Below are positions 232 to 21,403 of a DNA stretch of 64,000 nucleotides, piece after piece. Where the stretch lies: the NCBI GenBank assembly GCA_965240325.2, contig OZ251224.1, positions 3,286,001 to 3,350,000 of the forward strand. The letters are read 5' to 3'. Below the pieces are notes generated by a model. That model was not told the DNA's origin. It worked only from the letters and a program-made list of their open reading frames with translations, and made no database searches. Position numbers and translations under genes: made by a program. How positions within the stretch are numbered: the stretch's first letter is position 1; every line of letters starts with the position of its first letter. This DNA is from Rebecca billardiae RCC1528. Its lineage: Eukaryota; Protista; Haptophyta.

Positions 232-3027
232 TCAAGGCGGCGCGAATTGAAGGCTGGATGACGGCGCGGAGGCGACGCCGTGGGGGTGCAGGTAGGGCGC
301 CGAACGAGACACACCTCGGGCGCGGCGGCGACGACCACCGACGATGGCGGGTGGCTTGGCGCGCTTTCCGCCGAGCTTATGGCCGCCATGCTCACACGGC
401 GTCGTGTGCGGAGCTGTCGTTCCGCACGCGATGGCGTCGACGGCCGCTGGTGGCTGCAGCTGCAGCGATTCGCGATCGTGTGCGGCCGAGGTAGCCGCAA
501 TGTCGCACTCGCCGCGGGTGTCCACAGCAGAGGCCGTGCCCCAGTCGAAGGCCGCCGGGTCTGGCTCGAGGCTGTACAACTCGGCCATGTGCCCGTCCCG
601 AGCGAGTGCCTCCGCCATCGTCACCGAGGACGGCTGGCACGTCACAGCCCACTCCGGCAGCGGCGACTCGTCACAGCGCGCCTTCTTGCTCGCGCGGGCA
701 TGCCCGGGCATGCCGAACGGCGCGCTGCTGCACTGCGCGATTCCTCTCACGAGGCGCTTCGGCCTGAGGGCGGCGCCCTTGTCTGACCCCTCGTGCGCGC
801 GATGGACTCGCGATGTCGAGCCCTCGCTCGTCGCGAGCGCGCCCGATGCCGAGCTGTGCGCGTAGGCTGTCGTGCACGGCCCGTCGTGCAGCAGCGTGAG
901 CAGCGTGCGCCCCTGCGAGCGCGTCTTGAAGTCGAGCTGCAGGGAGCCCGCGATCTTGCGCTCGGCAACGGGCGCAAACCGCTCGCCGAGGTTGTTGTTC
1001 AGCGCGCGAAGTGCGCAGGGTGCCTTGGTCACCGACGCATCTGGCGGGCGCAGCTCGCCTGCCGCCTGAAGCACCTCTGCGCCCGCGTGCCGGGCCACAC
1101 CACCAGCGTCGGCCGCGGGCTGATGGCTGTAGTCGGCCTGCGAGTCAGTGAAGACGTCGTCGAAGAGGTTGATGGGCACGAGGAGCTCGTCGTCATGCGA
1201 CAGCTGCTCGCACGCATCCGTCGCCGCCTCGGCGAGCGCGGTGGCGAGAAAGTCGTAGTCGTCGAATTCATCCGCGATTGGATGATGGCGGCTGCTGGTC
1301 CCGCGCAGCAGGCTGTCCATGAATTCGACGCCCCACGAGAGAAGCTCAGCCTCGTCGTCAGCCGTGGTGTCGGCGGCGAGTGTCTTCCCGTCAACGGACG
1401 CGGCCTGCGTATCGTCTGGCTCGAGTCGCACGCCGTCCGTGTCGTCGTCGATCACCCTGGCTGCAATCGTCACGGGCACCTCCGGCGGCGTGGGAGCCGC
1501 GGCCTCGGCGGTGGTTGGGAACGATGCGGTGCGCGCCGTGTCGCCGGGCTGCGCAGAGGTGGACGGCTCCTCGACGGCAGATGGTGGAGAAGGAGCGAGC
1601 GCGTGAGCTCGTGGCGGGGACGGCTCGAGCGTGGGCTCGGCGTCATCTTCGTCCGGAGTGGGCAGATCTCCGCCCGTGGCGGCGGTGGGAGAGACGAGGG
1701 GCTGGTCCATTGCATCGCCCGGCGCGTTGCTCTCGACGTCAAATGCGCTGCCGAGCGCGCGCCGAGTCGAGCCAGCGCTGCCGGACGCGGACGCAGGCAT
1801 CTCTTCGGCGGGATTCCCTGTGGCCTCCGCATCAGCCGGCTCGCCGGGCTGTGGCAGCGCGTCTGGTGCGTTCAACGGCCGGCGGAGCGGCGGGGGCTCA
1901 GTCGGCGGCGCGTTCCCGAGCGCGCTGGGCGTGCGAACGCCTGGCTTCTCGGCCGGCGGGAGCGCCGCGCCGGGCTGGGATGTGAGCACGGCAGCGGCGA
2001 CAGAAGAGCGCTCTTGCGAGGGCGAGGGCGCAGCATCGGCATCGCCCATCGACGCCACGGTGTGAGGTGCCAGAGGCGGCTGCAGCGCGGCTATCGGCGC
2101 ACTCTCCGCCGCCGCTGGGGGCGCTGCAACCGGCTGCTTCTCCGGGAGGGAGGTCCCAGGCTCGTCAGCTGGCGCGGAAGAGTCGGCCGTCGCATCAAAG
2201 TTGAGCTTCGATGCGCGCGGCTTGCGCTTGCGAGCAGCGATCAGCGCCTGCAGGCCCTGCCGGCTGGAGACCGCAGCGGCGCGCACGGGGCGGTCCAGCT
2301 GCTGCGTGCCGATCGGCGAGGGGCCAGCCCACATGAACTGCACCTCGGCGTGGGCAGCTGTGCTCGCGCCCGCCTGGGCCTCGCACTCGACCAGCAGGCC
2401 GGCGCCGACAAGAGTGGCAACCGCCTCGGCCACGCGTTGCGCCACCTCCTCGGGCGGCAGCAGCTTGTTCTCGAGCGATCGAGCGAGGTCGTGCAGATTT
2501 GACACGATGTCACCATGCGTGAGACGCACGTCCTCGGCTGCCTGCTGCCGCGCTGCGACCAGTCCGACGATCGCTCGGACAGCAGCACGCAGCACGCTGT
2601 CGCTCCTGCCGGCTGCGAGCAGCTTGCACGTCGCCTCTTGTGCCTCTGGCGCCGAAAGCGAGCGCAGCGTCGAGCCGAAGAACGCCATGGGCGCGATGCC
2701 AATCACCGAGCTCTTGCGAAAGCCGGGTCGCAAGTCGGGGTGGATCAGGCCGATCGTCTCCAGCACGACAGCCAAGTCGCCTGTGCGCACGCGGGCGAGG
2801 CAGAGTTGTGAGACGCGTGCGATTGTTCAACACCGCTCCCGCGTCCGCGGGACGCGGACGCGAGCGCGCGGGCACGCACGCAGCACTGTAAACGGCAGGC
2901 CGTCCATCGCGCTCGAGCTGCAGGACGAGCGCGCGTGTCCAAGTCGCACGCCGTTTGCCTGCGTGCGCAACTCGTCGAGGAGTCTGCGCGCGGCCGTGGC
3001 GCACAGCCGTACAACCGGCACATGAGC
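232..3027 (-). CDS. Hypothetical protein with a possible divergent E2F/DEL-like winged-helix N-terminus and a long low-complexity Pro/Ala/acidic C-terminus; 2 exons (3027-2880, 2780-232)
   Basis: 852-codon ORF 232..2790. A GT-AG intron at 2879-2781 joins the upstream ATG exon in frame, giving 'FTVLRDLAVVLETIGLI', reminiscent of E2F 'RRLYDIxNVLExIGLI'. Function uncertain. Confidence 0.55.
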
Positions 3028-14137: not shown

Positions 14138-14269
<132 letters not shown>

Positions 14270-14493: not shown

Positions 14494-17400
14494 TCACGCG
14501 CTCAGCTGATGCGCCTCGTCCTCCTCCTCCTCGCCGCCACCCGGCTCAACACGCAGTCGTGGTACCGCGGGGCGCGCAGGTGACGATGGACGCCAGTCCT
14601 GTGCTCGCGCGTGCGACACGGACCGCGGTCCCACCGGGTCGCGCATCGAGCGCAGACCGGCACGCCTGCTGGGGCTTGCGCTCGGCGCGCTCGTCAGGTG
14701 GAGAGCCTGGGAGCTCTGGCTGCGCGCGCGCGCGGACTGCGAGTGCTCCGCATCAGAGCTGCCAACCACCGCGTCGGCGATGCGCGCCGTCGCGCCCTCC
14801 AGTGCCGCGAGTCGCCTCGTGATGCGCATCCGCCACCGGTCGTCCGCATCGGCGTCCACAATGCGCTCGAGCATGAAGTCAAGCGCTGCCTCGATCATCT
14901 GCTCACGCCACTCGGCCGAGCCCGCCGCGTGACGGCCGTGACGGCCGATCGCGCGCGACCCGCCGCCCGTCACCCCACGCGGGCCCTCCGTGCCCGCGCC
15001 AACAGCCACTGCGCGGGCGGTGGCAGTGTCACTCTCGCTCGGCGCGCGCGCGGAGGACAGCGCGTCCTCAGACGCGCGAGCGCTCTCGCGCAAGTCGTGC
15101 TTGGGTGCCCCGCTTCCGCCTCGGTCGCCCGCGTCGGCGTCGGCGTCCGTGTTCTCGCGTGCGCCCATGCCCGAGCGTGCTCCGCTCTCGTCGCGCGCGG
15201 CGGCTCGGCTGCCGCCGCCCTTGCGCGCCAGCGCGAGCAGCCGCGACGCTGAGCTGTGGGACTCCGTGTGTGCGGGGTTGTGACGGGCGCTGCCGCTGCG
15301 GCCGTGGGCGCGCGCGCGGCGCTGCCGCCGCCGCCGCCGCCAGCGCAGGAGCGCGAGCACCGCGCGACTCGGGATGCCAAGCAGGTTGAGCGGCGGCGGC
15401 GCGGGCGGCAGCCGCGCCGCCGCCTGGATCAGCTTCGCCTGCACGAACTTGGCGTGCACGTCGAGCTGGTCGTGGATCGTGTCGAAGGTCTTGGACATCG
15501 TCGCGATCACCACGTTGAGGAGCAGCACGATCATCACGAGGGCGAAGACCATCATCACCGTCCACGCGAGCCAGCCCACGTGCGACTGGCGCAGGCAGTC
15601 GTACCGCGCGTCCGCGCCGCCGAACGTCACCTCCATCAGCACGACGAACGCCAGGCCGAGCGAGCCGCCAAACTCCGCGTGCAGCTCCGCCTGCGCATCC
15701 GGGTCGCCGGCGGTTGAGCAGCCCGCGCCGTCCGCGCCGAGCGTCGCCTCCTTCAGAAGCACGTGGAGCGCCGCGCCGAAGGCGGCCAGCAGCGGCAGCA
15801 TGAGGCACACGATGCGTGCAACGTCCTGGAGCATTCGGAACACCTGCGCGCGCGCGGGACACCGGGGGCGGCGGCGCGCGCCTCCCGCGGCGTGAGCGGT
15901 GCGTGGCGCGCGGCGCCGCGCACCGCGCACTGCTCACGCGAGGGGTTGGGAGAGCTGGTGGCGGATTAAAGTCGCCTCCGAACGGCGCGCGCCGCGCGCT
16001 GCGCGGCGCGGCGCGCGCCGCGGGCGATGCGCGCGGCGCGCGCGCTCGCCATGAGCAGGAAGGGCCCGAGCGCCGACGAGAGGTAGAGCACGCGCATCTG
16101 CCGGATGACGAGGCCGAGCAGTGCGACGGCCATGAGCTGCGTCGCGAGCGGCGCCTCGGTCGCGTCGAGCTCCGGCTCGGCGCGCGCGCCCGCCGAGTAG
16201 GCCGCGCCGCGCGCGATTCGCATCGCCAGCGCGACCGCACACAGCACCAGGCCACCCATCTCGAACCCGTTGAAGTCGTCGGCGAGCCACGCGCCCGCGC
16301 CGCCGCGCAGCAGCTCCTCCAGCTCGACGACCAGCGCGCCGATCGCGTTGAGCAGCGCGAGCCACTCCACCGCCAGCTGCCGGTCGTCCGCCAGCGCCTC
16401 GAGACTCAGCGAGTGGTCGCCTTCGCCCGCGCCCTCGCCCCGCCTCTGCTCCGTAACCTCGCGAGCGCCCGCGCGCGACGCGTCGGCGGCCGGCCGGATG
16501 GGGCGCAGCGAGACGCACGCCGCGACGAGCGCCGCGCCCATCAGCCAGTGCCCGAGGAGCTTCACGATCGGCGAGTCGAGCAGCACCGCCGACGCGCCGT
16601 ACGAGAAGGTGCGCGTGCCGCGCCCCGCGCGCTGCTTGAGCACGCCCGCTCGGAACGTGATCACGAGCCGAGCGGACAGAGTCCGGATCAAGTCCGGGAA
16701 GAAGACGATGGGGAGGGCGATGAGCGGCTGGAGGGCGAGGACGAGGGCGGGCGAGGCGAGGAGGAGGAGCCACGCCTTGCGCGGCGACGTGTACTCGCGC
16801 AGCATGAAGACCATCCTCCGCAGCTCCAGCGCCGCCTGCAGCGCGCTCCCGCCAAGCGCTCGCGCGTGCGCCGCCTGCACCGGAGGATACGACAAGATCA
16901 GCGTGCACCCGCCCTGCGCCGCGCGCTCGAGCAGCGGCCGCTGAGACTCCCAGCCCTCGCGCGCGGCGGCGCCGTCTCCGCCGCCGCCGCTCCCGCCGCC
17001 GCCGCCGCCGCCAGCCGCGGCCGCGCGCCCGCGGCCGCCGCCCGCCGGCGCGGGCGCGGCGAAGGCCAGCTCGGCCGAGCAAATGGCGAGCTCGAGCAGC
17101 CGCGCCGCGTGCCTGCAGCCGTCCTCCGCCGCCTGGCCGGCCTGCTCGCGCAGCCGCGGCGCGAGGGCGGCGCACGCGATCGAGCTCTCCAGCGCGAGGT
17201 GCGCGCCGCCCGTGTGCGCCACGCTGAACGCCACCACCAGCGCCGCCGTCTCCAGCTGCTCATCGCCGTCCAGAGCGCAGATCCACTGCGCGACGTCGGC
17301 GCCCGCGCCGCGCACGGCGCTGTCGCCTCGCGTGTCCAGCACGCTCGAGCGCAGGGCCGAGGCGCCGCGCAGCCCGCGCATCGCGAGGCTGGTCGGAAGC

Positions 17401-19304
17401 ATCGCGCCGAGCGCCGAGAGCGCCGGGCCTCCGCCGCCGAGCAGCGCGCCCGACCCATCGCCGCCGCCGCCGCCGCCGCCGCCGGCGGCGGCCGCGCGCG
17501 TCGCCGCGCGCAGCACGCGCGCGCGGTGCGTGTCCGCGTCGAAAGCGTCGGTATCTGACGTGAGCAGCATTCTGCATCTGGGCGCGATCTCGAGGATGAG
17601 CAGCGCGCCGCGCACGACGCGGGCGAAGCTCGGCCGGTTGCCCGCGAGCGTCAGCCGCTTGAGCGCGCCGTTCTCGCGCAGCGCCAGCGCGAACTCCGCA
17701 CCGGACTTTGCGGAGAGCCGGTTGTGGTCGAGGTGGAGCTCGGTAAGCGTGTCGTTGGCGCGGAGCGCGCTCGCGATCGCCACGCCCGACGCGTCGGCGA
17801 GCTGCGCGCTGGCGAGGTACAGCGTGTGCAGCGAGCGGTTGGCGGCGAGCGCGCCCCCGAGCGCCACGCCCGCCCGGTCGGAGAGCAGCGTCGCCGAGAG
17901 CCCGAGCGTCTGCAGCGAGTCGCGCTCGAGCGCGCACGCCGCGAGCGCCTCGGCCGTCAAGTCTGTGAGCGCGTGATTGGACGAGAGGTAGAGCACCGCG
18001 AGCGTGCCCGACGCGCGCGCGGCGGCGGCGAGCGCCTCGCCGCCGAGGTCGGTGAGCTCGTTCCCGTCGAGCCCAAGCGACGCGAGCACCACCGCGCCGC
18101 GCTCGATCGCGTCGGCGAAGCGCTCGGCGCTCACATCTGTGAGGTCGTTCGAGTTGAGTCGCAGCTCGCGCAGCGCGCTGCGCGGCGCGCCCGCGAGCGC
18201 GTCGGCGAGCGCGACGCCCGTCTGGTCGGTGAGGCTGTTCGTGCTGAGGCCGAGCGCGGTGAGCCGCTCGTTCCGCGCGAGCGACGCCGCGAGCGCCCGG
18301 CCGGACACGTCGGTCAGCCGGTTCGATGAGAGCCGGATCTCGCGCAGCGCGCGGCTCGCCTCGAGCGCGCCCGCGAGCGCCAGCCCGGCGCTGTCGGTCA
18401 GCACGTTGTTCGAGAGGTAGATCACCTCGAGGGTGTGGCTGCGTGCGATGGCGTGCGCGAGGGCCTGCCCGGCGCCGTCGCCGAGCTGGTTGCCCCCGAG
18501 GAACAGCATCCGCAGCCCGCACGACGGCATCGCCAGCAGCTCGGCGAACGCCACCCCCACCGAGTCTGGAAGGCCGCAGTCGTTCAGCCGGAGCTCGCGC
18601 ACGCTCGCGTTCTCGCGGAGAGCGCGCGCGAGCGCGAGGCCGCCGGACTCGCGCATCGGGTTCACGGAGAGGCCGAGCGAGGTGAGCGTGCGGTTGTGCG
18701 CACGCAGCATGCTCCCCATCGCCACGCCCACGCTGTCGAAGCTGCGCGTGCTGCCGGTCGCGCCGCTGATGCGCAGCTCAGCGAGCGTCGTGTTGCGCAC
18801 GAGCGCGTCGGCGATGGCCTTGCCCGAGCGCTCGGTGAAGACGTTGCCGCTGAGCCACAGCGAGCGCAGCGTCGCGTTTCGACCCTCGAGCGCGCGCGCG
18901 ATCGCCTGCCCCGTCCCGTCAGACAGCTTGTTCGCCACGACAGACAGCTTCTCGACAGAGGGGTTCGCTTCGAGAGCTTCGCCCAGCCGTCGGCCCGAGC
19001 GGTCGGTGAGCTCGTTGTTGTCGAGGATGAGCGAGCGGAGCACGCGTGTCCTGCGCACGAGCTCGGCGAGAACCAACCCATGCGAGTCGGTCAGCCGGCG
19101 ATTGTCGAGCTCGAGCTCAGGCGCGTCGAGCAGCTCACGCACGTCCATGCGAAGCCTGGCGGCGAGCTCGTGCGCGTGGGGCAGATCATCCTCGCGGAGC
19201 GCCTCCTGCGAATGCATGCGCCCGGCTGGCGCGCGTGGGCCACCTCTGATCGCGGCGGCGACGGCCACGTCATCCAGTGCAACTGCGCGCTCCGCCGCCG
19301 CCAT
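14494..19304 (-). CDS. Ribonuclease-inhibitor-type LRR protein fused to a TRP-like cation channel; exons 19304-16051 and 15843-14494
   Basis: Many 28-29-aa LxxLxLxxNxL repeats, then TM helices. A GC-AG intron (16050-15844) yields the S4-S5 linker GPFLLM|VFRMLQDV, followed by S6 LLLNVVIATMSKTF, TRP-box-like AKFVQAKLI and PPPLNLL. Confidence 0.8.
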
Positions 19305-19350: not shown

Positions 19351-20488
19351 CAAGGGCGGTTCCTAAGGGCTGTCAACTCCCAGTGGCGGCGGTGGCAGAG
19401 GTTGGTCGCCGCTTCGCTGCTGCGCGGCCTCGCTCCAGCGACTACTGTAACTCTCGTGGGCGCCCGCCCTGGGGGGCGAGTGGGGCGCGCACGGCGCGAG
19501 CTCCTGTGGCCGTGTACGCGCGCGCGGAGGCGGCGCGCGTGGCTGGGCAGGTGCTAAGGAGTGTATGTCGCCCTCCCACGCCGCGCGCCTTGCTCGCCGC
19601 CGCTTTCGCCGCGCCTCAGGCCAGCGCGCACGCGTGCGCCGCCTCCAGAGCCAGCCTCGGGCAATCGGCAGCCGCCCGCGCATGTGTGATGCGCGGTCTG
19701 GTCGGCGCGAGTCGGTCGGGGCCATCGGGCGAGGCTCGCATACTATAGACGCGCGCCATGCTGCCTCGCGCCGCCGCGCGTGGGTTGTCATGGGTCGACA
19801 CGCAAGCATCTTAGGTCTGACACGAACTGCAGCACGAATGCGAAAATGCTCATGTTTGGACGCTCATGGAGACGCTGGAGAGCACAATAGACGCGCGCAG
19901 GCGATGAAGAGCGGGGCAATGCACTCATAGGACGCCGTACACGCGCCCAATGCGGCCGCCTATCACGCGCATGTGCGCTCACTGTCACGTATTCGAGCTC
20001 ATTTCTGCTTGTCGTGCATTCATCGATCAGCTTCCTTCAACAGCTTCACGGGATGGGACCGGGCCCATGCGCGGCGGCGCGAGGCAGCATGGCGCGCGTC
20101 TATAGTATGCGAGCCTCGCCCGATGGCCCCGACCGACTCGCGCCGACCACACCGCGCACCACACATGCGCGGGCGGCTGCCGATTGCCCGAGGCTGGCTC
20201 TGGAGGCGGCGCACGCGTGCGCGCTGGCCTGAGGCGCGGCGAAAGCGGCGGCGAGCAAGGCGCGCGGCGTGGGAGGGCGACATACACTCCTTAGCACCTG
20301 CCCAGCCACGCGCGCCGCCTCCGCGCGCGCGTACACGGCCACAGGAGCTCGCGCCGTGCGCGCCCCACTCGCCCCCCAGGGCGGGCGCCCACGAGAGTTA
20401 GTCGCTGGAGCGAGGCCGCGCAGCGACGAAGCGGCGACCAACCTCTGCCACCGCCGCCACTGGGAGTTGACAGCCCTTACCGCCCTTG
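19351..20488. mobile_element. Non-autonomous foldback DNA transposon, family B (P/Galileo-like)
   Basis: About 425-bp TIRs (CAAGGGCGGT...ACCGCCCTTG), about 290-bp spacer, 7-bp TSD TCGCAGC at 19344-19350 and 20489-20495. Confidence 0.92.
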
Positions 20489-20554
20489 TCGCAGCGGTCG
20501 CTCATCGGGCGGAGCTTTCAGCGTGCTTGCGCTCCCGCCTCCCGGCCGAGATCG

Positions 20555-21403
20555 ATGGCCGCACATTTGGAACATAACGGGCGGGCCGGTCCGCCCATGG
20601 TCGGGCGGCCGAGTCCCCCCAAGGTCTTCTCTGTCTGCCCGAACTGCGACAAGGAGGTGCCCACCTCGAACCTACCGGTCCACGCCGCGCACTGCGGCCG
20701 CCACTTCTTCCGCTGCAAGGCGTGCGACGTGCTCCTTCCAGCCCACGAGAAGGAGGCGCATCTCGCCGAGGCAGTGCAGACACCAGCAGCGCTGCTCGCG
20801 TCACTTGGGCGTGGAGACACGAGCGCTGTGAGGCGAGCATTGGCTCACGGCGCGCCTCTCGAGCCGAGCCTGGCCCTCGAGGCGGCGGGGAGTGGAGACG
20901 CGTCACTCGTTGAGTGCGCGATCGCTCGTGATGGTGACGCGGTCGCGCGCTTGCGAGATGCGGCGACGGGCATCACCATGCTCCACCGGGCGGCGCGAAG
21001 TGGGAGCGTCGTGGTCGCGGAGGTGCTCTTGAGCCACGGCGCAGACCCTCTGGCCACGACCACGATGGGAGACTCGCCGCTCCAGGTCTCCCACGGCGAT
21101 GCTATGAAGCTCCTTCTCGTGGCCCATGGCGCGCAGATTGAGCGCTTGCCATTGGGGGCGGTGCGGCGCGCGGAGGATGCCCCGCCGATGCAGCACCAAG
21201 GCGTGCTCACGCAGCCGGCGCTCTTGCGCAGAAGCTCGTCGCACAGGCGAGGACTCGTCGAGAGCATGCGCAGCACGGTGGAGGCAGTCAGGCAGGATGC
21301 TGTCTCACCCCTCGGGCCTCCTGCTCGGAGTCTGACAACTACTCGGACAATGTCAGCGGCTGGACCATTGCCTGGCACGTTGCAGTCTGCTCGACGACGG
21401 TAA
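20555..21403 (+). CDS. TRAF/XAF1-type zinc finger plus ankyrin-repeat protein
   Basis: CPNC-x9-VHAAHC and CKAC-x10-H, then ankyrin motifs (GITMLHRAARSG...VLLSHGADP, GDSPL). Confidence 0.75.
   Translation: MAAHLEHNGRAGPPMVGRPSPPKVFSVCPNCDKEVPTSNLPVHAAHCGRHFFRCKACDVLLPAHEKEAHLAEAVQTPAALLASLGRGDTSAVRRALAHGAPLEPSLALEAAGSGDASLVECAIARDGDAVARLRDAATGITMLHRAARSGSVVVAEVLLSHGADPLATTTMGDSPLQVSHGDAMKLLLVAHGAQIERLPLGAVRRAEDAPPMQHQGVLTQPALLRRSSSHRRGLVESMRSTVEAVRQDAVSPLGPPARSLTTTRTMSAAGPLPGTLQSARRR

What the first reader, a model, noticed from the sequence alone, without database searches (positions are those of the whole stretch)
14494..19304. LRR-TRP fusion: ribonuclease-inhibitor-type LRR solenoid on a TRP-like channel
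Seen: over 500 aa of RI/NLR-type LRRs, a linker, then a TM module with a TRP-type S4-S5 linker, S6 'LLLNVVIATM' and TRP-box-like motifs, completed only by a GC-AG intron. Known: TRP channels usually carry ankyrin or MHR N-termini, and LRRC8 channels have LRRs but a pannexin-like fold. Inference: an unusual ligand- or pathogen-sensing cation channel, a candidate sensor-executor in one polypeptide.
Basis: partly seen in the sequence, partly recalled or inferred. Interest (0 to 1): 0.7.

Follow-up and report, generated by a model that had tools for sequence, protein, structure and literature searches.

The report
TRP channel with leucine-rich-repeat N-terminus
This GC-rich haptophyte alga has an intact gene for a TRP-type cation channel whose usual cytoplasmic ankyrin-repeat arm is replaced by an 18-repeat ribonuclease-inhibitor-type leucine-rich-repeat horseshoe, and it belongs to a small, apparently undescribed clade of such channels.

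Summary
On the minus strand, exon 1 (19304-16050) is one open frame encoding about 18 RI-type LRRs, a TRP-type helical linker with pre-S1 region, and S1-S4. A 206-nt GC-AG intron (16049-15844) follows. Exon 2 (15843-14494) encodes S5, pore, S6, a TRP-helix region and a conserved C-terminal helix.

No RNA run was listed. The junction LGPFLLM|VFRMLQDV is nonetheless read without interruption in three paralogues, in a Pavlova sp. transcript-derived protein and in a Diacronema lutheri protein.

At least nine LRR-TRP loci exist in this genome, four of them with LRR and pore in one uninterrupted frame. In a tree, all LRR-bearing channels fall in one group (bootstrap 100, SH-aLRT 99). No ankyrin-bearing channel lies inside it; ankyrin-bearing TRPs lie outside.

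Sequence and fold place the channel with TRPC/TRPM/TRPN-like TRPs. It is not an NLR, an LRRC8 channel or a polycystin.

The architecture is a new variant of a known kind. I found no paper describing it, and databases call its relatives "hypothetical". Other readers of this scan noted five sister loci in the same genome.

The "pathogen sensor-executor" reading is untested. The LRRs are cytosolic, and one recent duplicate pair shows no excess amino-acid change in them.

The parts
16050..19304 (-). Exon 1, 1085 codons from the ATG at 19304. It encodes the LRR array, the linker, the pre-S1 region and S1-S4 in one open frame.
   Evidence: ORF list and translation. Codon-position GC is 0.76/0.55/0.93.
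17580..19124 (-). About 18 RI-type leucine-rich repeats of 28-29 aa (residues 61-575), predicted to be cytosolic.
   Evidence: Pfam LRR_6 at 2.7e-20. Repeat register. AF2 beta-alpha solenoid with pLDDT around 90. Foldseek match to ribonuclease inhibitor at TMt 0.80-0.91, and to NLRP LRRs.
17352..17579 (-). Gly/Ala-rich, low-confidence tether between the LRR array and the linker domain (residues 576-651).
   Evidence: pLDDT below 50 in the AF2 model. Coding periodicity is kept.
16590..17342 (-). TRP-type linker helical domain and pre-S1 region (residues 655-905). It carries the conserved 'C..L.. P.VQ' motif, a hydrophobic pre-S1 helix pair (841-879) and a beta hairpin. A disordered insert spans 751-782.
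   Evidence: AF2 sub-model with pLDDT 81.7 and pTM 0.77. All 50 top Foldseek hits are TRPC, TRPM or algal TRP1, aligned over about 400-450 columns. VIA Z is 12-13 to TRPC1/C4, TRPM8, TRPM4 and crTRP1 across model residues 1-431. Motif alignment.
16080..16571 (-). S1-S4 voltage-sensor-like domain (residues 912-1075). The S2 residues E994 and E997 and the S3 residues N1012 and E1015 sit at the positions of the TRPM/TRPC Ca2+ site.
   Evidence: A profile built from the LRR clade alone hits only TRP channels in the PDB, led by TRPM2 at 2.8e-11 and TRPC4 at 8.5e-7. Invariant E994 and N1012.
15844..16049 (-). Intron of 206 nt in phase 0, with GC donor (ATG|GCGAGC) and AG acceptor (CGCAG|GTG). It sits at the start of the S4-S5 linker.
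   Evidence: Sequence. The junction is read without a break in paralogues L019, L013 and L018 and in P0151 and P0152. It is not a repeated element. No RNA evidence.
14494..15843 (-). Exon 2, 449 codons plus the stop. It encodes the S4-S5 linker, S5, the pore loop, S6, the TRP-helix region and the C-terminal tail.
   Evidence: Ion_trans at 2.1e-7. TIGR00870 at 2.1e-12. PDB hits to TRPM4 at 1.6e-8, crTRP1 and TRPC.
15496..15813 (-). Pore domain. S5 is exon-2 residues 11-29. The pore helix and filter ('LMEVTFGGAD') are flanked by two conserved Cys. S6 is residues 92-116 ('VLLLNVVIATM').
   Evidence: Hydropathy. Family consensus 'C...L.E..L.G......C' and 'LLLNMLIA.MAKTFD'.
15379..15495 (-). Post-S6 TRP-helix region 'SKTFDTIHDQLDVHAKFVQAKLIQAAARLPPAPPPLNLL'. 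It aligns to the TRPM4 TRP domain but lacks the canonical Trp.
   Evidence: phmmer alignment to TRPM4.
14764..14931 (-). Conserved C-terminal helix ('...DADADDRWRMRITRRLAALEG...', exon-2 residues about 305-360), probably a coiled coil.
   Evidence: Conserved in paralogues L018 and L019 and in P0151, P0152 and P0065. Family consensus 'ERWR'. The coiled-coil role is inferred.

Best explanation
This is one intact two-exon gene for a subunit of a group-1 (TRPC/TRPM/TRPN-like) TRP cation channel. The cytosolic N-terminal solenoid, which is an ankyrin-repeat domain in its nearest outside relatives, is here a horseshoe of about 18 RI-type LRRs.

Shown:
- The domain order is LRR, flexible tether, TRP linker-helical/pre-S1 domain, S1-S4, S5-pore-S6, TRP-helix region, C-terminal helix.
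- The gene belongs to a lineage-specific clade of LRR-TRPs. The clade has at least 9 loci in this genome and members in Pavlova sp. and Diacronema lutheri.
- That clade sits beside ankyrin-bearing TRPs, consistent with a single swap of ankyrin for LRR.

Inferred:
- The protein forms a tetrameric non-selective cation channel with both termini in the cytosol.
- The LRR horseshoe acts as the cytosolic binding and regulatory platform, for a partner protein, ligand or cytoskeletal anchor. Its state would be passed through the linker-helical domain and pre-S1 elbow to the TRP helix and the S6 gate, as ankyrin or MHR domains do in other TRPs.
- The retained E-x-x-E (S2) and N-x-x-E (S3) signature suggests Ca2+ modulation as in TRPM4 and TRPC5.
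For: - LRR array: LRR_6 at 2.7e-20, 18 repeats and an RI-like fold at TMt 0.91.
- Channel: TIGR00870 at 2.1e-12. PDB phmmer hits to TRPM4, crTRP1, TRPC and NOMPC. An LRR-clade profile of pre-S1 to S4 hits only TRPs, led by TRPM2 at 2.8e-11. The folded linker plus S1-S4 matches only TRPs.
- One gene: LRR through S4 is a single ORF with GC3 of 0.93. The splice junction is read contiguously in L019 ('ELGPFTLMVFRMLQDVGRIV'), in L013 and L018 and in P0151 and P0152.
- Paralogues L020, L016 and L015 carry LRR_6 and Ion_trans in one uninterrupted frame; L014 does too, with LRR_6 at 21 bits, just under Pfam's cut-off.
- Pavlova sp. CCMP459 transcript-derived P0151 and the MMETSP proteins P0013/P0159 carry LRR plus TRP in one product.
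- Tree: all 15 LRR rows fall in one 18-row group with support 100/99. No ankyrin row lies inside it, and LRR versus ANK needs only one change.
- Ca2+-site positions.
Against: - There is no transcript evidence for this locus; none was listed. A public gene call splits off exon 2 as a 446-aa protein, P0001.
- The canonical TRP-box Trp is absent.
- Tetramerisation and conduction are untested; the complex job gave no verdict.
- The role of the LRR rests purely on analogy.
- Foldseek E-values for the linker plus S1-S4 model are weak (0.02-0.4), and Z of 12-13 is within the range seen for generic helical bundles. The fold assignment therefore leans on the sequence profiles.
Confidence: 0.8

Rival explanations
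1. Immune-like sensor-executor. The cytosolic RI/NLR-type LRR would recognise a pathogen or viral molecule, or a danger signal, and directly open the attached Ca2+-permeable pore. This would be a one-polypeptide analogue of an NLR resistosome.
For: - The LRR type is the one used by NLRs.
- The family is expanded, with at least 9 loci and a tandem near-identical pair.
- The LRR array length differs widely among members, from about 4 to about 22 repeats by jackhmmer envelopes.
Against: - No NACHT, NB-ARC or TIR domain is present.
- The LRR sits exactly where sister channels carry ankyrin repeats, so a generic scaffold role suffices.
- RI-type LRRs also occur in axonemal and cytoskeletal proteins, as shown by hits to doublet-microtubule proteins and CARMIL.
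- In the recent pair L015/L016, pN/pS is lowest in the LRR: 0.29 against 0.61 in the TM part. This is a single pair and therefore weak.
Confidence: 0.12
2. Mechanosensory or anchoring channel. The LRR solenoid would tether the channel to the cytoskeleton, axoneme or haptonema, as the 29-ankyrin spring of NOMPC does, so that force or flagellar events gate it.
For: - NOMPC is among the best PDB sequence matches for the family profile, at 5.6e-65 with the linker-to-S4 region aligned, although ankyrin repeats in that profile inflate the score. NOMPC also scores 6e-6 with exon 2.
- Foldseek hits of the LRR include several axonemal doublet-microtubule LRR proteins.
- A flexible Gly/Ala tether follows the LRR.
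Against: No localisation or partner data exist. An LRR horseshoe is a rigid binding scaffold rather than a known spring. The axonemal hits may only reflect the shared RI-type repeat.
Confidence: 0.12
3. Non-functional or truncated product. The 206-nt segment would be an insertion that is not spliced, so the locus makes only LRR plus S1-S4, stopping at 15966, or it is a decaying paralogue.
For: No RNA run was listed. An automatic public gene call treats exon 2 as a separate 446-aa protein. The intron is absent at this position in the paralogues examined.
Against: - Both exons keep strong codon periodicity, and exon 2 has no frame-breaking stop over its 449 codons.
- GC...AG boundaries restore the exact collinear sequence in phase 0.
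- GC-AG is the majority class in another GC-rich haptophyte (PMC4028052).
- Conserved motifs reach as far as the C-terminal helix.
Confidence: 0.06
4. Two separate genes, an LRR protein and a TRP channel, wrongly read as one.
For: None beyond the split public gene call at the intron.
Against: - LRR, linker and S1-S4 are in one ORF without a stop. S1-S4 alone cannot form a channel.
- The same order holds in at least 8 paralogous loci, four of them within single ORFs.
- It also holds in transcript-derived proteins of other species.
Confidence: 0.02

Closest known systems
Group-1 TRP channels: TRPC, TRPM, TRPN/NOMPC and Chlamydomonas TRP1 (PDB 6pw4)
   Same: They share the 6TM S1-S6 core, the 'LGP' S4-S5 linker, the 'LLNxxIA' S6 motif, the post-S6 TRP-helix region with a proline-rich 'PPP(L/F)N' segment, the linker-helical/pre-S1 domain with the 'C..(P).Q' motif, the S2/S3 Ca2+-site positions, two pore-loop Cys and a C-terminal helix.
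   Different: The N-terminus is an RI-type LRR horseshoe rather than ankyrin repeats (TRPC, TRPN, TRPA, TRPV) or MHR domains (TRPM). The TRP-box Trp is replaced, reading 'HAKF'. The protein cannot be assigned to any metazoan subfamily.
Ankyrin-bearing protist and metagenomic TRPs, the nearest relatives outside the clade
   Same: The linker, TM core and TRP region are homologous. They belong to the same broad clade in the exhaustive search and in the tree.
   Different: They carry Ank repeats: 20 of 45 long hits by Pfam. None of them lies inside the LRR group.
Ribonuclease inhibitor and NLR (NLRP, NOD2) LRR domains
   Same: They have the 28-29-aa alternating LRR_6 repeats and the same horseshoe fold, at TM 0.8-0.9 to RI.
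   Different: No NACHT or NB-ARC domain and no effector domain is present. Here the LRR is fused to an ion channel.
LRRC8/VRAC anion channels
   Same: LRRC8/VRAC is a channel polypeptide that carries a cytosolic LRR domain influencing gating (from general knowledge).
   Different: LRRC8 has a 4TM pannexin-like pore at the N-terminus and its LRR at the C-terminus, and it forms hexamers. Here the LRR is N-terminal on a 6TM TRP fold.
Polycystin-1 (PKD1)
   Same: PKD1 is the one well-known protein that combines LRRs with a TRP-like (TRPP) channel domain in one polypeptide (general knowledge; PMC9672506 was listed).
   Different: The LRRs of PKD1 are few, extracellular and capped. The protein has 11 TM helices with GPS and PLAT domains, and its pore part is of group 2 (TRPP). 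None of these domains is found here.
Plant NLR resistosomes (ZAR1 and helper NLRs) as Ca2+-permeable channels
   Same: The concept matches: an LRR sensor coupled to a cation pore (general knowledge).
   Different: The resistosome pore is formed by N-terminal helices after oligomerisation through NB-ARC. It has no 6TM channel and no homology to the channel part here.

Membership tests
TRP channel superfamily (group 1, TRPC/TRPM/TRPN-like) | Six-TM core with an S1-S4 bundle and an S5-pore-S6 domain homologous to TRPs | tested here: met
   Ion_trans at 2.1e-7. TIGR00870 trp at 2.1e-12. TRPM4 at 1.6e-8 plus crTRP1, TRPC and NOMPC. S1-S4 profile to TRPM2 at 2.8e-11 and TRPC4 at 8.5e-7, with TRPs only. 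VIA Z of 12-13 to TRPs.
TRP channel superfamily (group 1, TRPC/TRPM/TRPN-like) | TRP helix with the TRP box (EWKFAR / WKFQR) directly after S6 | tested here: inconclusive
   The post-S6 segment aligns to the TRPM4 TRP domain, including the proline-rich part. However, the box reads 'HAKFVQAK' and the invariant Trp is absent. It is also absent in clade members P0151 and P0152.
TRP channel superfamily (group 1, TRPC/TRPM/TRPN-like) | Linker-helical domain and pre-S1 elbow before S1 | tested here: met
   The AF2 sub-model aligns over its whole length to TRPC1/C4, TRPM8, TRPM4 and crTRP1. The broader family profile aligns positions 10-403 to TRPC4 residues 70-505 at 1.9e-37. The motif is conserved.
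TRP channel superfamily (group 1, TRPC/TRPM/TRPN-like) | N-terminal ankyrin repeats (TRPC/N/A/V) or MHR domains (TRPM) | tested here: not met
   Pfam finds only LRR families in exon 1, with no Ank or TRPM domains. This feature defines subfamilies, not the superfamily.
TRP channel superfamily (group 1, TRPC/TRPM/TRPN-like) | Homotetramer that conducts cations | not testable with these tools
   The four-copy pore-domain job gave no verdict. Conduction needs electrophysiology.
RI-like LRR (Pfam LRR_6) | Tandem 28-29-aa repeats 'LxxLxLxxNxLtDxGaxxLaxaL' forming a beta-alpha horseshoe | tested here: met
   LRR_6 at 71 bits against a cut-off of 23.4. 18 repeats. Model and RI superposition.
NLR / NOD-like receptors | Central NACHT or NB-ARC nucleotide-binding oligomerisation domain | tested here: not met
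   No such family at E <= 1 in either exon.
LRRC8 / VRAC | N-terminal 4TM pannexin-like pore with a C-terminal LRR | tested here: not met
   The order is reversed and the TM part is a TRP 6TM core.
Polycystin-1 / TRPP | PKD_channel-type pore with a large S1-S2 ectodomain, plus GPS and PLAT domains and extracellular capped LRRs | tested here: not met
   No PKD_channel, PLAT, GPS or REJ hit. The best sequence matches are TRPM and TRPC.

The most novel reading that the evidence does not exclude
LRR-TRPs are cytosolic receptor-channels. Binding of a specific ligand, such as a viral or bacterial molecule, a metabolite or a partner protein, to the concave face of the LRR horseshoe would directly gate Ca2+ entry. 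Haptophytes would then have an innate-immunity or chemosensory device that merges the sensor of an NLR with a TRP pore in one polypeptide, and the paralogues with different LRR arrays would give different specificities.
Probability: 0.12. Interest if true: 0.85.

Novelty: new variant of a known kind. Interest (0 to 1): 0.6.

Why it matters
TRP channels are the textbook polymodal sensors, and their cytosolic N-terminal solenoid (ankyrin repeats or MHR) defines the subfamilies and their regulation. A clade in which that solenoid is an RI/NLR-type LRR horseshoe shows that the TRP gate can be driven by a quite different repeat scaffold.

It also gives a natural experiment on how N-terminal domains couple to the pore. 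Finally, it offers candidate Ca2+-entry pathways for signalling in haptophytes, an ecologically important algal group whose channels are almost unstudied.

The proteins already sit in databases as "hypothetical" or "Ion transport domain-containing". Gene callers can split them at GC-AG introns, so the family is easily missed.

Tried and rejected
- RNA evidence: the look-up of sequencing runs listed no run, so read laying could not be used.
- Word-index protein searches were blank with the window's linker/S1-S4 region, probably swamped by Ala/Gly/Arg-rich words. With P0151 they returned only 3 proteins.
- ESM Atlas feature search on residues 571-1085 scored 0.75-0.76, below the useful range.
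- Complex prediction with four copies of the pore domain gave no verdict. It is not evidence either way.
- The intron as an 'introner' or repeated element: only GC-rich low-complexity matches appeared, with no full-length copies. Rejected.
- Regex labelling of Ank and LRR was too crude. I replaced it with local jackhmmer and Pfam.
- The family profile that includes ankyrin-type relatives drew ankyrin proteins from the PDB. I repeated the search with the LRR clade alone.
- Diversifying selection on the LRR was tested on the only very recent pair, L015/L016. No excess was seen. One pair is not decisive.
- Literature: seven searches for LRR plus TRP in haptophytes, protists or algae found no description (and the reading).
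- The exons were handled separately by reference.


Full report
**1. What is there**

The window is about 68% GC. It is part of contig C5 of a 72-Mb, 41-contig genome. The closest named relatives of the protein studied here come from Pavlova sp. CCMP459 and Diacronema lutheri, which fits a haptophyte, probably a pavlovophyte.

Two long open frames lie in series on the minus strand: 19376-15966 and 15930-14494. Starting at the first ATG (19304), exon 1 is 1085 codons. Exon 2 (15843-14494) is 449 codons plus the stop. Third-position GC is 0.93 in exon 1 and 0.87 in exon 2, with GC2 near 0.55 throughout. This holds even in the low-complexity linker and the tail. The 206-nt segment between the exons and both flanks lack this periodicity.

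**2. The LRR part**

- Exon 1 matches Pfam LRR_6 at 2.7e-20, and also LRR_4, LRR_1 and LRR_8.
- About 18 repeats of 28-29 aa can be laid in register between residues 61 and 575.
- AlphaFold2 with a 34-row alignment (mean pLDDT 79.3) gives 18-19 beta-alpha units at pLDDT around 90.
- Foldseek matches ribonuclease inhibitor (1dfj_I at TMt 0.91 and rmsd 2.6 A; 4peq at 3.5e-17), then NLRP, NOD2, CARMIL and axonemal LRR proteins.
- No NACHT, NB-ARC or other domain is found.
- I saw no signal peptide or TM helix before the array by inspection (no predictor was run). By TRP topology the LRRs are therefore cytosolic; this is an inference.

**3. The channel part**

- Exon 2 matches Ion_trans at 2.1e-7 and NCBIfam TIGR00870 'trp' at 2.1e-12, over profile positions 505-685.
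- In the PDB it matches TRPM4 (1.6e-8), Chlamydomonas TRP1 6pw4 (1.3e-6), TRP-gamma, NOMPC, TRPC3/4/5/6 and TRPM2/5.
- The TRPM4 alignment runs from S6 ('VLLLNVVIATMSKTF' against 'ILLLNLLIAMFSYTF') through the TRP domain. There the window has 'HAKF' where TRPM4 has 'YWKA', so the canonical Trp is missing.
- A profile of the LRR clade alone, covering linker to S4 (alignment A4), hits only TRP channels in the PDB: TRPM2 chanzyme at 2.8e-11, TRPC4 at 8.5e-7, TRPM5, crTRP1 at 2.3e-5, TRPM4 and TRPM8.
- Residues 655-1085, folded alone (pLDDT 81.7, pTM 0.77), return only TRPC, TRPM or crTRP1 chains among the top 50 Foldseek rows. These alignments span about 400-450 columns but carry weak E-values of 0.02-0.4.
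- VIA-align gives Z of 12-13. Whole-length alignments are to TRPC1/C4 (284 residues), TRPM8, TRPM4 and crTRP1. That Z range alone would not be decisive for a helical protein. Together with the sequence profiles it is.
- The linker is therefore not a mere spacer. It is the TRP linker-helical/pre-S1 domain, including the conserved 'C..L...P.VQ' motif.
- S2 carries E994-x-x-E997 and S3 carries N1012-x-x-E1015, and E994 and N1012 are near-invariant in the clade. In the TRPM2 alignment these fall on the positions that, from published structures (my knowledge), bind Ca2+ in TRPM2/4/5/8 and TRPC4/5.

**4. Is it one gene?**

LRR, linker and S1-S4 are in one ORF, so the fusion itself needs no splicing. 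Only S5 onward depends on removing 16049-15844 (GCGAGC...CGCAG, phase 0).

No RNA run was listed for this stretch, so the splice rests on homology:
- The predicted join 'LGPFLLM|VFRMLQDVARIV' is read without interruption in paralogue L019 ('ELGPFTLMVFRMLQDVGRIV').
- It is contiguous by tblastn in L013 and L018.
- It is contiguous in the Pavlova transcript-derived protein P0151 ('LGPYLQMLFKML') and in D. lutheri KAG8457333.1 ('FGPYVMMVWRMF').

GC-AG donors are the majority class (56% of 241 mapped junctions, some checked by RT-PCR) in Emiliania huxleyi, another GC-rich haptophyte (PMC4028052). The intron is not a dispersed repeat.

A public automatic gene call (P0001, 446 aa, 100% identical) starts at the Met just inside exon 2. 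It lies on a contig whose ORF spacing matches the window with the intron retained. Such calls evidently split the gene.

The exons were treated separately by reference.

**5. A family, not a one-off**

- Searching the genome with S5-TRP gives 24 matches at about 14 loci.
- In 10-kb stretches around them, LRR, linker, S1-S4 and S5-TRP segments lie collinear on one strand at C7, C13, C5 (a tandem pair), C16, C23, C11 and C3.
- Single uninterrupted frames at L020, L016 and L015 carry both LRR_6 (above Pfam's cut-off) and Ion_trans (above the cut-off in L015 and L016, 21.9 bits against 25 in L020). L014 carries Ion_trans with LRR_6 just under the cut-off.
- The exhaustive search of 1.84 billion representatives gives 410 hits at E <= 1e-3, and only 7 at E <= 1e-30.
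- Among 45 long hits, 20 carry ankyrin repeats and 5 carry LRR_6 by Pfam.
- Iterated local profiles find LRRs in all the closest hits: P0002, P0003, P0005/P0152, P0013, P0020, P0065, P0151 and P0156. P0081 is added by Pfam.
- A careful ML tree of the S1-to-TRP region puts all 15 LRR-labelled rows in one 18-row group with UFBoot 100 and SH-aLRT 99. The three others in that group are a partial protein (P0025) and the C5c locus, represented by two near-identical rows (P0011 and its genomic ORF in L017), in which no LRR was detected. No ankyrin row lies inside the group, and LRR versus ANK needs a single change (quick version).
- Array length ranges from about 4 to about 22 repeats. The window's gene is at the long end.
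- Five other first-stage notes in this scan describe LRR-TRP loci elsewhere in this genome. One of them coincides with the C5 tandem pair that I examined.

**6. How it probably works**

Shown: the architecture and its homology to TRPs.

Inferred:
- A tetrameric cation channel with cytosolic termini.
- The LRR horseshoe, hung on a flexible Gly/Ala tether (pLDDT below 50), takes over the job of the ankyrin or MHR domain. That means binding partners or ligands and passing their state to the gate through the linker-helical domain, the pre-S1 elbow and the TRP helix.
- A Ca2+ site in S2/S3 modulates gating.
- The conserved C-terminal helix ('ERWR' motif) helps assembly.

What the LRR binds is unknown. 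The immune-receptor reading and a cytoskeletal-tether reading are both open at roughly 0.12 each. The only selection test I could make, on the recent pair L015/L016, shows pN/pS of 0.29 in the LRR against 0.61 in the TM part. That does not favour an arms race, but it is a single pair.

**7. Novelty**

I found no paper describing a group-1 TRP with an LRR N-terminus. The D. lutheri relatives are annotated 'hypothetical protein / Ion transport domain-containing protein'.

The known combinations of LRR with channels differ:
- Polycystin-1 has extracellular capped LRRs, 11 TM helices and a TRPP-type pore.
- LRRC8 has a pannexin-like fold with a C-terminal LRR.
- Nyctalopin (with TRPM1) and the BK gamma subunits are separate LRR proteins.

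I therefore rate this a new variant of a known kind, with solid evidence for the architecture and open function.

Noticed in passing
window 19364-20479: A palindromic element of about 1.1 kb lies between the LRR-TRP start codon (19304) and the divergent gene at 20486. Its arms are 337 nt at 99% complementarity (19448-19784 and 20064-20400) and 81 nt at 98% (19364-19444 and 20399-20479). Another note of this scan (s1-336878) already covers it.
   Followed up: partly
window 20486-21403 (+): The head-to-head neighbour encodes a small protein with ankyrin repeats (Ank_2 at 4.2e-8) and a weak, sub-threshold match to an XAF1-like N-terminal zinc finger.
   Followed up: partly
window 14138-14266: An (AG)n microsatellite of about 64 copies lies about 230 bp downstream of the stop codon.
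   Followed up: no
G000 C5:1026797-1037132 (L015:5298-8057 and L016:4759-8133): A tandem pair of LRR-TRP paralogues is 94% identical in protein. Their differences are concentrated in the TM part rather than in the LRR. This suggests recent duplication, possibly with patchy gene conversion.
   Followed up: partly
L019 (G000 C23:839000-848999), about 2280-2365 minus strand: The closest paralogue has an intron 12 codons downstream of the window's intron site. It has a GT donor, while the window's intron site itself is uninterrupted. Intron positions therefore differ between recent paralogues.
   Followed up: partly
P0001 / L032 (Logan contig ERR14847148_13834): A public automatic gene call splits this gene at the GC-AG intron into a 339-aa fragment and a 446-aa 'protein'. 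Such calls probably under-report this family.
   Followed up: partly
window 16269-16325 and 16200-16280 (exon-1 residues 994-1015): The TRPM/TRPC-type Ca2+-site positions are kept: E-x-x-E in S2 and N-x-x-E in S3. In contrast, the TRP-box Trp is lost across the clade.
   Followed up: partly
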